A model generated the notes under the pieces. That model saw only the letters and a list, made by a program, of their open reading frames with translations, had not been told where the DNA came from and searched no databases. The position numbers were made by a program, and so were the translations under genes. This document shows, one piece after another, positions 12,943 through 18,157 of a stretch of DNA of 64,000 nt; position 1 is the stretch's first letter; each line of letters opens with the position of its first letter. This stretch comes from Dendrobates tinctorius (lineage: Eukaryota), in contig NW_027361825.1 in NCBI RefSeq assembly GCF_039654945.1, positions 14,880,001 through 14,944,000 on the forward strand, written 5' to 3'.

Positions 12943-13324
12943 ATGATTTTGATGCCTCCTGCGATGTTCCGCTCTCATTACCGACCAAATACGCAGCCTC
13001 CAGCCACTCATCTCTGCTATGAGGTGTACGATCAGCACAAAAGTGTTGATTTCGGTCACCTTACCAACACCGGAGAATCCCACGCTGAGATGGTGTTTCT
13101 TGGAGAACGATTCAACGATGCTTGGAGAAATTGCACTGTTGTATGGTATATCTCATGGAGTCCATGTAATAATTGCACTGAGATTTTGCTGAACACGTTC
13201 CTTCCCAATAATCCTCATGTCAAGTTACACATCATATTCGCCAAGGTCCATCCGTGCACTTCTAAAACTAAGATCCAAGAACTTAAATGTAAAGGAATAA
13301 AAATACGACCAATGTGTCAAATAG
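12943..13324 (+). CDS. APOBEC paralogue 2 catalytic exon
   Basis: ORF-track 12919-13344 protein contains HAE...SWSPCNNC; GT donor at 13325. Confidence 0.92.
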
Positions 13325-16300
13325 GTAAGAGATTGCACGATTGAACTGTGATGAGTTTTGACAATCTTAGATATTCTACATAATAAACCCTCAACCTATC
13401 ATTCGATGAGCCACCATATGGACTTAAAAAGTCAAAGTTTTCACCTACAAGTTTTTCAGTGCCTGTTTAGGGTAAATTAAGTTGTCCCTTTGGCTTGGAT
13501 TACACAGTGATGCAAATGTTTATTTTCCAAGCAAATAAAACAGGAAAGATTTAGGGCAGTCATAAATATTAATCTAGACTTGCCTGAACCAATCTATTGC
13601 ACAAAGATGTACTGGTTATTTATTATCTTCTCTTCCACGATGGCAGATGTCAGGCGAAAGAATGATTGGAGATTTTAGATTCCACCATGTCAATCTTTTG
13701 AAGTGGCTTCTTTCCCTCTACTCATTAAAAAGAACACATAGGAGAAATATTGTTAGGACAAAAGTTGTTTTAGGGCTCTTTAACACATCCTGATATTTCT
13801 GGTACTGAAAAAACAATTAACGGAGATATCAATGTCCGTGTAATACTTGTGGCATACATGTGGCAACCGTGTGCTGCATCTGTATCACACGTGCCAATGC
13901 CTGGTAATCAGCGGTACTGTTTGTGCTGCTCCCCAGGGCCGGGTGCTGAAGAAGGCTCACATCACTGTGCCCTGCTCCAGCTGCGATCAGCGCTAGCAGG
14001 GGAGAATGTTGAGTTATATTCAGCTGATAACAAAAGCAGTATGCAGCTGATGGGAGTATTCAACAGTCGCCGCCTGCTCTATAAATAAAATGATGTGGGT
14101 TCCCCTATAGTTTTGATAACCAGCCAGGCAAAATTGAGAGCTGTGGGCTGTAAACCTCAGCTGTCAGCATTAGCAAGGCCGGTTATCAAGAAAAGAGGGG
14201 TTCCCACACTGTTTTTAAATTATTTAAATAAGTCATTAAAAAAAACCGTGAGGTCCCCTGATTTTTGACAACCATCCGAACTAAAGAAGTTAGCTAGGGG
14301 TTGGTATTCTCAGGCTGGCAAGTGACCATGGATACTGGCTTAAATACAGCAGCCCACAGCTGCCCAGAAAAGGTGCATCTTTTAGATGTGCCAATTCTGG
14401 CAATCTGCCCGGCTCTTCCCACGTGCCCTGTAGAGGTGGCAAGTGGGGTTCATATTTGTCGTGTTGATGTCACCTTTGTATTGTCAGGTGACATCAAGCT
14501 CACTGCTTAATAATGGAGAAGCGTCTACAGTTGTGGCAAAAGTATTGACACCCCTCCTGCAATTCTGTCGGATAATACTCAGTTTCTTCCTGAAAATGAT
14601 TGCAAACACAAATTCTTTGGTATTATCTTAATTTAATTTGTCTTAAATGAAAAAACACAAAAGAAAATGAAGCAAAAAGCAAAACATTGATCATTTCACA
14701 CAAAACTCCAAAAGTGGGCCAGACAAAAGTATTGGCACCCTCAGCCTAATACTTGGTTGCACAACCTTTAGCCAAAATAATTGCGACCAACCGCTTCCGG
14801 TAACCATCAATGAGTTTATTACAATGCTCTGCTGGAATTTTAGACCATTCTTCTTTGGCAAACTGCTCCAGGTCCCTGATATTTGAAGGGTGCCTTCTCC
14901 AAACTGCCATTTTTAGATCTCTCCACAGGTGTTCTATGGGATTCAGGTCTGGACTCTGCTGGCCACCTTAGAAGTCTCCAGTGCTTTCTCTCAAACCATC
15001 TTCTAGTGCTTTTTTTAAGGGTGCTTTGGGTCATTGTCCTGCTGGAAGACCCATGACCTCTGAGGGAGACCCATTTTTCTCACACTGGGCCCTACATTAT
15101 GCTGCAAAATTTGTTGGTATTCTTCTGACTTCATAATGCCATGCACACGGTCAAGCAGTCCAGTGCCAGAGGCAGCAAAGCAACCCCAAAACATCAGGGA
15201 ACCTCCGCCATGTTTGACTGTAGGGACCGTTTTCTTTTCTTTGAATGCCTCTTTTTTTCTCCTGTAAACTCTATGATGATGCCTTTGCCCAAAAAGCTCT
15301 ACTTTTGTCTCATCTGACCAGAGAACATTCTTCCAAAACGTTTTAGGCTTTTTCAGGTAAGTTTTGGCAAACTCCAGCCTGGCTTTTTTATGCCTCGGGG
15401 TAAGAAGTGGGGTCTTCCTGGGTCTCCTACCATACAGTCCCTTTTCATTCAGACGCCGACGGATAGTACTGGTTGACACTGTTGTACCCTCGGACTGCAG
15501 GGCAGCTTGAACTTGTTTGGATGTTAGTCGAGGTTCTTTATCCAACATCCACACAATCCTGCGTTGAAATCTCGTCAATTTTTCTTTTCCGTCCACATCT
15601 AGGGAGGTTAGCCACAGTGCCATGGGCTTTAAACTTCTTGATGACAGTGCGCACGGTAGACACAGGAACATTCAGGTCTTTGGACATGGACTTGTAGCCT
15701 TGAGATTGCTCATGCTTCCTCACAATTTGGTTTCTCAAGTCCTCAGACAGTTCTTGGTCTTTCTTTTCTCCATGCTCAATGTGGTACACACAAGGACACA
15801 GGTTGAGTCAACTTTAATTTATGTCAACTGGCTGCAAGTGTAATTTAGTTATTGCCAACACCTGTTAGGTGCCACAGGTAAGTTACAGGTGCTGTTAATT
15901 ACACAAATTAAAGAAGCATCACATGATTTTTTGAACAGTGCCAATACTTTTGTCCACCCTCTTTTTTATGTTTGGTGTGGAATTATATCCAATTTGGCTT
16001 TAGGACAATTCTTTTTGTGTTTTTTCATTTAAGACAAATTAAATGAAGATAATAATACCAAAGAATTTGTGTTTGCAATCATTTTCAGGAAGAAACTGAG
16101 TATTATCTGACAGAATTGGAGGGGGGTCAATACTTTTGGCCACAACTGTATGAGACACCTATCCATTATTAATCCTATAGTTACATGGTAAATAAAGACA
16201 CAGCCAGAATAAAGTCTTTTATTTAAAATAAAACAAACTTTTTACTTTTTTATTTAAAAATAGCAAACACAGTTATACTTACCTAACACCTAATTCCACT

Positions 16301-18157
16301 GAATTCCTCGTCTCCTGTAATAAAACAAAATAAAAACAATATCCCTCACCTGCCCGTCGTTCTTGTCGTAATCCATGTCTGGGGATAGAGTTTTCACCCT
16401 GGACGGTGCAAGATGCGACCGTCCAGGCTGAGAACCGCTTGGGAATGAGCTGCTGGGAGCACAGCATCAGTAACCAACGATGACATCTGAGAGGTTACCA
16501 CAGGTCATTGAGGCTATATTAACAAGTGGGCTGAAATAAGGTGACCTCAGCACTATGAGAAAAGGTCAGTGAGTTCACCGCAGTTCAGTTCAGCTGCCAC
16601 CTGTTCTGTTATTAGCTAAAGAAGGTGTTGACTGATTGGAGTAGTATTCCCATTAGCCACTGCTTACTCTCACTGTTATAAATTGAGTACAACTCTCAAC
16701 ATACTCCGCTATTAGTGCTGATCGCAGAGCGCACAGGGGAGAATGATGAGAATGGTTTTCAGCATCCGGTGCCAGGGAACAGCACTAACTGTACCGCTGA
16801 TTGCCAGGCGTCAATACGAGTCACACTGATGACACATAGATATCAGCCGTGTCTCATTGGTGTACTCGTGTGCGGGATGTTTTGCGGCCCGTGCTGACAG
16901 CAAAAAACGGACATGTCAGCGTGTTTTGCCCACGGACATACTGACACGTGCACACACCCATTCACTTGAATGGGTCTATATGTGTAAGTATCTCTGATAT
17001 GTGTTAAAACGGTCACCACATGTACCAGAAACACTGACGTGTGAAAGTGTATGGTTACCATCAAGTCAATGTACGAAAATTTCGCACGGGCCAAGCTAGT
17101 CTTTTTTTATTTTAAGGAATTCAAAATTGGTGTCTTCAAGCAGAATCATTTTAGGAAATGCTTCTTTTTTTGGAAAGCTGTGGAAGAGTTTTTTTTGTAA
17201 AGCGGTTTTGAGGATTTTTGATAGGGTATTTTGAAGCCTTTTGATTAGACAGTGGCTAGATTGCAAAGATTTCCTTCAAGATCGTCTTCATTCACTGTTT
17301 TAAATGCCCACCCAGGAATTTTTCAAAACCTATTCAGGGGAACAAAAAAAAAAAAACACAAAAACTCTTCGTATGACCATCACGGTGGATTTCCCGTAGA
17401 AATTAATTGGAAGAGTTTACCAAAAGAATTTTGGATATATTTTGATAAAAAAAACTCAGTATTAAAATAGCCTTAGCGTAGAAGAAGAGTTTTAAAGGGA
17501 ATCAGTCAGCAAGTTTTTGCTATTTAACCTAAGAACAGAATGATGTAGGAGCAGAGATGCGGCTTCCAGTGATGTATCACTTGCTCAGCTGCAAGTAGTT
17601 TCAATAACTTTATCAGCAGGAGATCATCAATGACTAGGTGTCTTGTGTCAGGCAGTGCAGCTAAGCTATGCAGCCCCATCACTGATTGGCTACTTGTGTA
17701 CACAGGAAGCTGCCAATGAAGGATGTGGGCGGAGTTATACAGAGCTCAGCAGTCAGAGCACTGCTATACATAAAACAGAGAAAACAGGAATTCTTTCAAA
17801 ACTGCACAAAGCAGCCCAGTAAGTGACATCACGGGAATCAAGGTCTTTGCCCCTACATTGTGCTGCTTTCTGATTACTTATATAGACCTGCTGACCCATT
17901 AAGAACCACGCTATCGTAGAACTTACAAGTTGGATATCATTTGACTTTAAAGCATAGGGCAGAAATGACTTGGCAAGGACATAAAAATTCTTCTATTTTT
18001 ATTCTATTTTCCTCTTCATGAATTAATTTTTTTTCTTTCCATTTTTTTAGACTTTCGTTGGTGCTGGAAGCATTTTGTCGACACGTCGGAATCATTCATC
18101 CCACGGCAAAATTTAAACAACGATTATTACAAGGCTTTCCGATGGTTGATGAGCTGA
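12943..18157 (+). CDS. AID/APOBEC-family zinc-dependent cytidine deaminase (paralogue 2), 162 aa; exons 12943-13324 and 18051-18157
   Basis: Motifs [17 protein letters not shown]-x24-PC-NN-C and WYISWSPC. The phase-1 intron (ATAG|GTAAGA ... tttttttAG|AC) joins RPMCQI to [10 protein letters not shown] at the position conserved in AID/APOBEC1/APOBEC3. The ATG has A at -3. Orthology to a named member cannot be assigned by eye. Confidence 0.9.
13830..17050. mobile_element. Non-autonomous DNA element (Harbinger-MITE-like ends) interrupted by a Tc1; boundaries approximate
   Basis: The right end reads ACTGACGTGTGAAAG. The internal block is the inverted homologue of 4700-5400 and is continuous across the Tc1 insertion (GCGTCTA|TGAGACACCTATCC). 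Confidence 0.45.
14528..16148 (-). mobile_element. Degenerate Tc1 transposon with long TIRs; frameshifted transposase
   Basis: Ends are TA|CAGTTGTGGC...GCCACAACTG|TA. Transposase pieces lie in ORFs 15538-15789, 15015-15671 ([15 protein letters not shown]) and 14840-15034. Confidence 0.92.
17496..17900. mobile_element. Kolobok/T2-type MITE, degenerate
   Basis: TTAA|AGGGAATCAGTCAGC ... CTGCTGACCCATTAA ends with internal inverted symmetry. Confidence 0.5.
18051..18157 (+). CDS. APOBEC paralogue 2 terminal exon: (D)[34 protein letters not shown]
   Basis: Strong polypyrimidine acceptor, phase matches the upstream donor, CWxxFV motif, TGA at 18155-18157. Confidence 0.85.

What the first reader, a model, noticed from the sequence alone, without database searches (positions are those of the whole stretch)
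12943..18157. Complete two-exon AID/APOBEC-like deaminase that does not fit a named family member
Seen: an intact HAE-x24-PC-x2-C zinc site, SWSPC, and the conserved phase-1 intron before D-F-x-x-C-W-x-x-F-V, giving a 162-aa protein. Known: SWSPC is shared by AID, APOBEC1 and APOBEC3 Z1/Z2 but not by APOBEC2 or APOBEC4. The protein mixes traits. DFGHLTN is AID-like, HAE and LCYEV are APOBEC3-like, and the uninterrupted catalytic exon is APOBEC1-like. It has neither the AID export tail nor the APOBEC1 hydrophobic tail. Inference: a lineage-specific, minimal single-domain deaminase, possibly related to amphibian APOBEC5/NAD-type clades or new. It is also a compact base-editor candidate.
Basis: partly seen in the sequence, partly recalled or inferred. 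Interest (0 to 1): 0.88.

Follow-up and report, generated by a model that had tools for sequence, protein, structure and literature searches.

The report
Frog-specific compact APOBEC-like cytidine deaminase gene
This is an intact, transcribed gene for a small (162 aa) AID/APOBEC-type cytidine deaminase belonging to a family conserved across frogs and already auto-annotated in about a dozen species, so it is a real but fairly ordinary new member of a known enzyme family.

Summary
ATG 12943, donor after 13324, acceptor before 18051 and stop at 18157 give a 162-aa protein with H47-A-E49, x24, P74-C75-x2-C78 and SWSPC.

The gene has three exons. A non-coding 5' exon ends at 11129 and splices to 12916.

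The window comes from a poison frog: the protein is 92-93% identical to a Ranitomeya imitator model.

The protein belongs to a sharply separated clade found only in frogs, from Ascaphus to Neobatrachia. Its own-profile domain scores are 207-326 bits, and the next best domain of any other protein scores 104 bits. The clade is under purifying selection (dN/dS 0.18-0.37), and other frogs have it as spliced cDNA.

It is not AID, because frogs have a separate AID. It is not APOBEC5/NAD1, because it lacks the tail with the KRKL motif and falls outside that clade. It is not APOBEC3.

Trees place it weakly beside lungfish and sauropsid APOBEC1 (93/78 and 88/59). AU tests do not reject other placements. 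It does not sit at the amniote APOBEC1 locus. I could not test whether it equals the published amphibian-only NAD2 clade.

The predicted fold is a complete APOBEC domain, closest to AID.

One caution: this genome has Arg at a near-universal Trp (W146R).

Verdict: new member of a known kind, of moderate interest. The scan's other notes on this cluster concern the same DNA.

The parts
10846..10986 (+). Putative promoter: two ISRE-core matches (10846-10856 on the minus strand, 10955-10965 on the plus strand) and TATAAA at 10981-10986, just upstream of the 5' exon
   Evidence: 3 matches to GAAANNGAAAS in 64 kb (1.9 expected by chance). Two of them lie within 160 bp of the 5' exon. One search shows the sequence. 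Function is inferred, not shown.
11004..11129 (+). Exon 1, non-coding 5' exon. The 5' limit is unknown. The donor is CAG|GTCAGT after 11129. It holds a 38-codon upstream ORF that ends at TGA 11118-11120.
   Evidence: homologous to the N-terminal 42 aa of the 213-aa Gnomon models P0001 and P0002, but with an in-frame stop here; 11037-11129 aligns to the 5' UTR of cDNA contig L003 and ends at the same CAG. RNA contigs break at 12914.
12916..13324 (+). Exon 2, with the start codon at 12943. It encodes residues 1-127 (helix 1 to strand 5) including H47/E49 and C75/C78.
   Evidence: RNA contigs X3 and X7 start at 12914 and X2 ends at 13324, all 100% identical. L003 cDNA 375-779 aligns to 12915-13319.
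13325..18050 (+). Intron 2 (phase 1, GT..AG, 4726 bp), enlarged by repeats. The same intron is about 940 bp in Spea and 520 bp in Pyxicephalus.
   Evidence: splice sites solved in L001 and L002; same position and phase in Ascaphus AID, cassowary A1 and alligator A1-like.
15018..15789 (-). Remnant of a Tc1/Sleeping Beauty-type transposase inside intron 2, broken into two frames
   Evidence: HTH_Tnp_Tc3_2 5e-25 and HTH_SB 1.1e-20; very high RNA-contig depth over 14.5-16.1 kb, coming from other copies.
18051..18157 (+). Exon 3 coding part, residues 128-162 (helices 5 and 6) plus the TGA stop. The extent of the 3' UTR is unknown; the first AATAAA or ATTAAA signals are at 19482 and 19513.
   Evidence: (L003 783-885 aligns to 18049-18151).
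3552..3677 (+). Terminal coding exon of an upstream tandem paralogue. The rest of that gene lies before the window.
   Evidence: 85% identical to residues 128-168 of Phyllobates P0003, the paralogue that has QAE in place of HAE. One search shows the sequence.

Best explanation
The locus is a functional, transcribed three-exon gene (two coding exons). It encodes a 162-aa, single-domain, zinc-dependent polynucleotide cytidine deaminase of the core vertebrate AID/APOBEC group.

It is the dendrobatid orthologue of a compact (160-170 aa) family that is conserved in frogs and found nowhere else in the databases searched. The family's nearest, weakly supported kin are the non-mammalian APOBEC1 proteins.

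Inferred mechanism: H47, C75 and C78 hold the zinc and E49 shuttles the proton. T22, N42, W72 and residue 103 form the cytosine pocket, as in AID and APOBEC3A, so the enzyme would convert C to U in single-stranded DNA and possibly RNA.

Inferred role: an interferon-responsive mutator or restriction factor acting on retroelements or viruses. It sits in a small tandem cluster with a paralogue that has lost the zinc-ligand His.

Shown: gene structure, family membership, conservation, transcription and splicing, and the predicted fold. Inferred: catalysis, substrate, interferon control and biological role.
For: - Intact ORF, canonical splice sites and catalytic motif.
- Orthologues in Ranitomeya, Phyllobates, Rhinoderma, Bufo, Leptodactylus, Pyxicephalus, Spea, Pelodytes, Leptobrachium, Rhinophrynus and Ascaphus. 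There are 46 invariant columns among 11 sequences.
- A family profile searched against 1.84 billion representatives gives own-family domain scores of 207-326 bits. The next best single domain scores 104 bits.
- The clade has 100/100 support. AID, A5 and sauropsid A1 are each monophyletic without it.
- It is sister to lungfish plus sauropsid A1 at 93/78 and 88/59. The nearest language-model clusters are all APOBEC-1-like, at 0.94-0.95.
- An A1 profile search found no separate amphibian A1 among 99 hits.
- Pairwise dN/dS is 0.18-0.37.
- Spliced full-length cDNA contigs exist in at least 14 RNA runs of other frogs.
- RNA contigs of this or a near-identical species end exactly at the exon borders.
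- The AF2 model has pLDDT 95.4 and the complete a1-b1-b2-a2-b3-a3-b4-a4-b5-a5-a6 fold. Its best solved match is human AID, with TM 0.89-0.91 and rmsd 1.8-2.3.
- The pocket residues T22, N42, H47, E49, W72, C75 and C78 are all conserved.
- Synteny is conserved (olfactory receptor, then the deaminase, then a MABP-domain gene on the opposite strand) in Spea and Pyxicephalus; the window has the deaminase-MABP part of it, with a paralogue rather than an olfactory receptor upstream.
- Two ISRE cores and a TATA box lie at the 5' exon.
Against: - No activity data exist for any member of this family.
- This genome carries Arg at position 146. That position is Trp in 11/11 family members and 34/41 other AID/APOBEC domains. 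It also has His at pocket position 103, which is Tyr in most. This allele may therefore be weakened.
- The A1 affinity is not robust. AU tests do not reject family+AID (p 0.12), the family on the AID/A3 side (p 0.35) or family+A5 (p 0.24).
- Profile scores to AID, A3 and sauropsid A1 are about equal at 90-104 bits. Scores to mammalian A1 and to A2 are lower, at about 65-69 bits.
- The locus is not the amniote SLC2A3-NANOG-A1-AICDA block.
- The family's slow evolution is unlike arms-race restriction factors.
- The total ISRE count in the window is not above chance.
- One RNA run shows unspliced contigs.
Confidence: 0.75

Rival explanations
1. The family is simply the amphibian-only 'NAD2' clade (or the 'amphibian APOBEC1' set) already described by Krishnan et al. 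2018. On this reading nothing here is new beyond one more species.
For: NAD2 is described as restricted to amphibians. [quoted passage not shown] All four traits fit this family. A 2025 preprint counts two amphibian 'A1 homologs' with a distinct synteny.
Against: The published NAD2 sequences could not be obtained, because no supplement is held. The Pfam 'NAD2' model scores this family at only 88-110 bits, whereas it scores AID and A3 at 183-190 bits. No Xenopus, Nanorana or Rana member was found, although those were the amphibian protein sets public in 2018 (my own recollection).
Confidence: 0.35
2. The family is an old frog-specific duplicate of AID rather than of APOBEC1. The weak A1 grouping would then be a long-branch effect.
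For: The best solved-structure and PDB-sequence matches are AID. The motif DFGHLTN resembles AID's DFGxLRN. The gene structure equals that of Ascaphus AID minus the last exon. The AU test does not reject family+AID, p 0.12. The family sits on a long stem of 1.1 changes per site.
Against: The free ML trees put it with A1 in both taxon samples. Holding it with AID costs 7.3 log-likelihood units. The language-model neighbours are A1-like. The motif WYISWSPC is of the A1/A3 type rather than AID's WF.SWSPC.
Confidence: 0.2
3. In this species the copy is losing function and is a hypomorph or young pseudogene. On this reading it is transcribed but not a working deaminase.
For: W146R replaces a Trp that is invariant in the family and near-universal in the superfamily. 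The pocket has Y103H. There are two new cysteines, G105C and R116C. The protein ends 5-6 residues earlier than non-dendrobatid orthologues. Its tandem paralogue has already lost the catalytic His in Phyllobates.
Against: The ORF and both splice sites are intact. dN/dS against L003 is 0.36. The short C-terminus is shared with Ranitomeya and Phyllobates, and H103 is shared with Ranitomeya, Leptodactylus and Pyxicephalus. The gene is transcribed and the splice sites are used.
Confidence: 0.15

Closest known systems
Non-mammalian APOBEC1 (lungfish, bird, turtle, crocodilian and lizard A1 / A1-like)
   Same: - Single SWSPC-type domain with the WY(I/L)SW(S/T)PC motif.
- Same phase-1 intron before D(Y/F)xxCW.
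- Like bird A1, the protein ends in that last exon, without the mammalian hydrophobic dimerisation tail.
- Groups with A1 in ML trees and in language-model space.
   Different: - Only 23-30% identity.
- A long private stem.
- Support is below the usual thresholds and alternative placements are not rejected.
- Different chromosomal neighbourhood: olfactory receptor and MABP-domain gene, rather than NANOG/SLC2A3/AICDA.
- Shorter loops, giving 160-170 aa.
AID (AICDA)
   Same: - Best structural match, TM about 0.9.
- DFGHLTN-type loop with the conserved Asn five residues before the catalytic His.
- Same large catalytic exon and the same phase-1 intron as frog AID.
   Different: - Frogs have a separate true AID: Ascaphus P0187 lies inside the 100/100 AID clade.
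- This protein lacks the final exon that encodes the AID C-terminal tail.
- HAE rather than HVE in most members.
- About 31% identity.
APOBEC5 / NAD1
   Same: HAE...SxSPCxxC core. It occurs in non-placental vertebrates, including amphibians. It is reported to be a DNA mutator.
   Different: - A5 is about 260 aa, with a disordered C-terminal tail carrying PxK and KRKL. This protein stops right after helix 6.
- The spacing between HAExxxL and SxSPC is 17 residues here, against 24 in A5.
- The A5 clade (Polypterus, coelacanth, lizard) is separate at 100/98.
APOBEC3 (single Z domains such as A3A, A3C, A3H)
   Same: Similar size class, HAE, LCYEV and SWSPC motifs, TM 0.82-0.89, and tandem duplication with a catalytically dead copy.
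   Different: - A3 is confined to placental mammals and groups with AID in the trees.
- This family evolves slowly, with dN/dS of 0.2-0.4 and 67% mean column identity across frogs.

Membership tests
AID/APOBEC (core vertebrate clade) | H-x-E and P-C-x2-C zinc and catalytic motifs in a deaminase domain | tested here: met
   H47-A-E49 and P74-C75-N-N-C78. Pfam AID/APOBEC models hit exon 1 down to E 2.5e-24.
AID/APOBEC (core vertebrate clade) | Complete five-strand, six-helix APOBEC fold | tested here: met
   AF2 model of the 92%-identical Ranitomeya orthologue has pLDDT 95.4 with all elements present. TM is 0.83-0.91 to solved AID and A3 structures. The window protein itself was not folded.
AID (AICDA) | Falls inside the AID clade as the species' AID orthologue | tested here: not met
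   The AID clade (100/100) includes Ascaphus AID and excludes this family.
AID (AICDA) | Extra 3' coding exon for the C-terminal tail | tested here: not met
   The stop lies in the exon that begins DFRWCW. Ascaphus AID has a further exon for residues 182-199.
APOBEC1 | Groups with APOBEC1 sequences in a phylogeny | tested here: inconclusive
   Sister to lungfish plus sauropsid A1 at 93/78 and 88/59. AU tests do not reject other placements. Mammalian A1 was not in the trees.
APOBEC1 | Position next to AICDA in the SLC2A3/NANOG...AICDA/MFAP5 block (amniotes, per the preprint read) | tested here: not met
   No AID exon was found in the 64-kb window. The neighbours in Spea and Pyxicephalus are olfactory receptors and a MABP-domain gene, and the latter is also present in the window at 23.8-42.1 kb. 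Only 10 kb or less of flank was seen in those species.
APOBEC1 | C-terminal hydrophobic domain (mammalian A1) | tested here: not met
   The protein ends at residue 162, right after helix 6. The domain is also absent from bird A1, so it does not define the wider A1 lineage.
APOBEC5 / NAD1 | Disordered C-terminal tail with PxK and KRKL motifs | tested here: not met
   No tail is present. Polypterus A5 (P0099) has TPSK and KRKL.
APOBEC5 / NAD1 | Falls inside the A5 clade | tested here: not met
   The A5 clade (Polypterus, coelacanth, lizard) has 100/98 support and excludes it. A sister relation is not rejected.
APOBEC3 | Placental-mammal gene within the A3 Z-domain clades | tested here: not met
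   The host is a frog. The family lies outside the A3 and AID side of the tree.
NAD2 (Krishnan et al. 2018) | Restricted to amphibians, within the core vertebrate clade, with no close named lineage | tested here: met
   Only anuran members were found among 5.8 billion and 1.84 billion protein sets. Its position is unresolved.
NAD2 (Krishnan et al. 2018) | Sequence identity with the published NAD2 members | not testable with these tools
   The supplement with the NAD2 alignment is not held. Pfam model names are not discriminating in this copy.

The most novel reading that the evidence does not exclude
The frog-only family is a separate, so far undescribed AID/APOBEC subfamily, neither APOBEC1 nor the published NAD2. 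It would have arisen by the time of the last common ancestor of living frogs and been kept under purifying selection. It would act as an interferon-inducible, unusually compact (160-170 aa) nucleic-acid deaminase, and it has spawned a catalytically dead partner in poison frogs.
Probability: 0.3. Interest if true: 0.55.

Novelty: new member of a known kind. Interest (0 to 1): 0.35.

Why it matters
Amphibians lack APOBEC3, and what they use for nucleic-acid editing defence is largely unknown. NAD1 and NAD2 were called uncharacterised in a 2021 review, and A5 has only been tested in marsupials.

This family is a concrete candidate. It is conserved across frogs, transcribed and very small, and it has an interferon-type promoter and a tandem dead paralogue.

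Its size is below AID and A3A (198-199 aa), so it is also a reasonable template for compact base editors if it proves active.

The finding is still one more member of a well-known enzyme superfamily, and its orthologues are already in public annotations.

Tried and rejected
1. Classification by Pfam name was rejected. 'NAD1' is the top hit at 112-127 bits, but 'APOBEC2', 'APOBEC_N' and 'NAD2' are within a few bits. A stingray AID and an armadillo A3 score 183-206 bits on the same models.

2. The 213-aa Gnomon-style protein with an N-terminal extension was rejected for this genome. The upstream exon has an in-frame TGA, and the region is non-coding in a related frog's cDNA.

3. A third deaminase copy downstream was rejected. 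The weak tblastn hits at 24.75 kb and 27.8 kb are repeat or chance matches without an HAE context.

4. Exon structure as an A1 marker was rejected.

5. Getting the NAD2 sequences from the 2018 paper failed, because no supplement is held. Conticello's 2008 review is not held.

6. DNA of the Ranitomeya locus could not be obtained because the file is too large. The stingray AID locus is not on record.

8. The window's own spliced protein was not given to Pfam, fold or atlas tools, because it has no reference and I did not type it. Exon 1 alone and the 92%-identical P0001:52-213 were used instead.

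
Full report
**What is in the sequence**

The plus strand has an ATG at 12943 and an open frame to 13324, followed by GTAAG. A T-rich tract and AG end at 18050, and a second coding piece runs from 18051 to the TGA ending at 18157.

Joined in phase 1, the two pieces give 489 nt and a 162-aa protein. It has H47-A-E49, then 24 residues, then P74-C75-N-N-C78. SWSPC lies at 71-75, and [10 protein letters not shown] directly follows the junction. 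Exon 1 alone hits AID/APOBEC Pfam models down to E 2.5e-24.

**Gene structure**

The CDS has two exons but the gene has three. A 5' exon ends at 11129 (CAG|GTCAGT) and joins an acceptor at 12914-15.

In the Ranitomeya imitator and Phyllobates terribilis models, this exon is read as 42 extra N-terminal residues, giving 213-aa proteins. In this genome the frame hits TGA at 11118-11120. In a related frog's cDNA contig (L003) the homologous stretch is plain 5' UTR and ends at the same CAG. The conserved start is therefore the M-I-x-M at 12943, as in all 160-170-aa orthologues.

**Transcription and splicing**

Contigs from four RNA runs were laid on 12400-18300.
- In X2, a 260-nt contig matches 13079-13324 without a mismatch and then carries 14 letters that do not fit the intron.
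- In X3 and X7, contigs match from 12914 inward without a mismatch and carry 24-28 further letters. The two shared letters are explained by exon 1 ending in AG, as the intron does.
- X1 has unspliced contigs at low depth.

I could not see the overhanging letters, so the junctions in this species are supported but not read directly.

Independent support comes from other frogs.
- Full-length spliced ORFs of orthologues sit on contigs of about 1 kb from at least 14 RNA runs.
- L003 is colinear with both window exons across the same junction.
- The phase-1 GT-AG intron is at the same codon in Spea and Pyxicephalus.

**Which organism and which family**

The closest protein is a Ranitomeya imitator model, 93% identical over exon 1 and 92% over all 162 residues. 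Next is Phyllobates at 83%. The window therefore comes from a dendrobatid frog.

Homologues of 160-170 aa occur in Rhinoderma, Bufo, Leptodactylus, Pyxicephalus, Spea, Pelodytes, Leptobrachium, Rhinophrynus and Ascaphus. That range spans the whole frog tree. None was found in Xenopus, Rana, salamanders, caecilians or any other animal.

Eleven sequences share 46 invariant columns. Pairwise dN/dS is 0.18-0.37.

A profile of the family was run against 1.84 billion representative proteins. Family members score 207-326 bits per domain. The best domain of any other protein scores 104 bits (an armadillo APOBEC3), with AID at about 75-96 bits and sauropsid APOBEC1 at about 71-94 bits. APOBEC2 and APOBEC4 do not reach the top 150, and every hit there has the SWSPC-type motif. 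The family is therefore discrete and sits in the AID/A1/A3 part of the superfamily.

**Pfam names mislead here**

'NAD1' is the best model for every member at 111-127 bits, but 'APOBEC2', 'APOBEC_N' and 'NAD2' follow within a few bits. A stingray AID and an armadillo A3 score 183-206 bits on those same models. I therefore gave the Pfam names no weight.

**Phylogeny**

I named the clades through source names of cluster members.
- Sauropsid APOBEC1: turtles, crocodilians, birds, lizards and tuatara.
- Lungfish APOBEC-1.
- AID, including Ascaphus AID.
- Mammalian A3.
- A syngnathid AID-like group.
- A clade of Polypterus, coelacanth and lizard proteins. I identify this as APOBEC5/NAD1 because the Polypterus protein carries the PxK and KRKL tail motifs that the A5 preprint gives as conserved.

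An IQ-TREE analysis (LG+C20 PMSF, 59 domains, rooted on A5) recovers the frog family at 100/100. It places it as sister to lungfish plus sauropsid A1 at 93/78, with AID, A3 and the syngnathid group on the other side at 92/92. Adding ten more bird and turtle A1 sequences keeps the grouping at 88/59.

AU tests do not reject the family with AID (p 0.12), the family on the AID/A3 side (p 0.35) or the family with A5 (p 0.24).

A language-model feature search independently lists APOBEC-1-like clusters as the five nearest, at 0.94-0.95. A search with an A1 profile returned 99 turtle, bird, tuatara and lungfish proteins and no amphibian one. I therefore saw no second, more orthodox A1 in frogs, within the limits of a word-indexed search.

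My reading is that the family is a distinct frog clade. An origin in the A1 lineage is the single most likely option, but it is not established.

**Gene structure and synteny as tests**

The phase-1 intron before D(Y/F)xxCW is shared by the window gene, Spea, Pyxicephalus, Ascaphus AID, cassowary A1 and an alligator A1-like gene.

The 'uninterrupted catalytic exon' is not A1-specific. Ascaphus AID encodes residues 3-143 in one exon.

What does set the family apart is that it stops in the D(Y/F)xxCW exon, as bird A1 does. It has neither the AID tail exon nor the crocodilian and mammalian A1 tail exon.

In Spea and Pyxicephalus the gene lies between olfactory-receptor genes and a MABP-domain gene on the opposite strand. 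The exons of that MABP gene are in the window at 23835-42125 on the minus strand. This is a conserved frog locus. It is not the SLC2A3-NANOG-A1-AICDA block of birds, and no AID exon is in the window.

**Structure and active site**

The Ranitomeya orthologue (13 differences from the window protein) folds with pLDDT 95.4 and pTM 0.90 into the full APOBEC domain, with short loops.

The best solved matches are human AID (TM 0.89-0.91, rmsd 1.8-2.3) and A3B, A3A and A3G (0.83-0.89). Predicted A2 gives 0.86 and opossum A1 gives 0.77.

The zinc and proton-shuttle residues, and the pocket residues T22, N42 and W72, are conserved.

There are two cautions for this genome.
- Position 103 is His. It is Tyr in 7 of 11 family members and in 36 of 41 other domains. 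His is shared with Ranitomeya and Leptodactylus in that alignment, and Pyxicephalus also shows it at the corresponding motif.
- Position 146 is Arg (CGG at 18104-18106). All 11 family members and 34 of 41 other domains have Trp there.

**Likely function**

By homology, the protein is a zinc-dependent C-to-U deaminase of single-stranded nucleic acid.

Two ISRE cores lie at 10846-10856 and 10955-10965, and a TATAAA lies at 10981. All sit just before the 5' exon, although the window-wide ISRE count is at chance level.

Together with the tandem paralogue, this points to an innate-immune, interferon-responsive role. The paralogue's last exon is at 3552-3677, and its Phyllobates orthologue has QAE for HAE.

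The family's slow evolution argues instead for a conserved substrate rather than an arms race. None of this has been tested.

**Comparison with the literature**

Krishnan et al. 2018 describe NAD1 in fishes, coelacanth, amphibians, lizards and marsupials. They describe NAD2 as amphibian-only, low in entropy and near no known lineage, and they also report APOBEC1 in amphibians. A 2021 review calls both NADs uncharacterised. A 2025 preprint characterises marsupial A5. Another preprint counts two amphibian A1 homologues with their own synteny.

The frog family fits the verbal description of NAD2, and possibly that of the 'amphibian A1'.

**Verdict**

This is a real, intact, expressed gene. It is a new member of a known kind and belongs to a frog-wide compact AID/APOBEC clade that public annotation already predicts under assorted '-like' names. 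It is of moderate interest as an uncharacterised candidate editing or restriction enzyme of amphibians and as a small deaminase scaffold.

Noticed in passing
window 11004-11120: The 5' exon carries a 38-codon upstream ORF (MYSPNKGCSASLL...). In the Ranitomeya and Phyllobates gene models it is fused in frame to the deaminase, giving 213 aa. Here a TGA breaks that fusion. In a related frog's cDNA the region is not an ORF at all. The 213-aa database models are therefore probably over-extended.
   Followed up: partly
window 3552-3677 (+): Last coding exon of a second, upstream deaminase paralogue (DFLYCWKHFVD...LQSDS). It is 85% identical to the Phyllobates paralogue P0003, whose catalytic His is Gln (QAE). 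This suggests a conserved dead copy in poison frogs.
   Followed up: partly
window 18104-18106: Codon 146 is CGG (Arg). Every other family member, and most AID/APOBEC proteins, have Trp (TGG) in the 'PW' motif before helix 6. It could be a species change, an allele or an error.
   Followed up: partly
window 23835-42125 (-): Exons of a MABP-domain gene (MVB12-like by domain and by product length, 262-269 aa). It lies tail-to-tail with the deaminase gene. The same neighbour is present in Spea and Pyxicephalus.
   Followed up: partly
window 14500-16150, ORFs 15018-15789 (-): A Tc1/Sleeping Beauty-type transposon remnant lies inside the deaminase intron. RNA-contig depth there is hundreds to thousands of times that of the exons, coming from other copies in the genome.
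   Followed up: partly
L009 (Ascaphus truei AID locus) 5540-5962: Frog AID encodes residues 3-143 in a single exon. From my own recollection, this region is split in two in mammalian AID. The intron may have been lost in frogs or gained elsewhere.
   Followed up: no
P0184 (Pelodytes ibericus orthologue): This orthologue has HVE, as in AID and APOBEC1, where all other family members have HAE.
   Followed up: no
Pfam-A copy used by the tools: The models named APOBEC2, NAD1, NAD2 and APOBEC_N all score true AID and APOBEC3 proteins at about 180-206 bits. In the newer version quoted by another tool, PF18782 is called APOBEC3 and PF08210 is called AID. Family names from these models should not be used to sort AID/APOBEC proteins.
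   Followed up: yes
window 27552-27686: A run of 135 N (assembly gap or masked stretch), left untouched.
   Followed up: no
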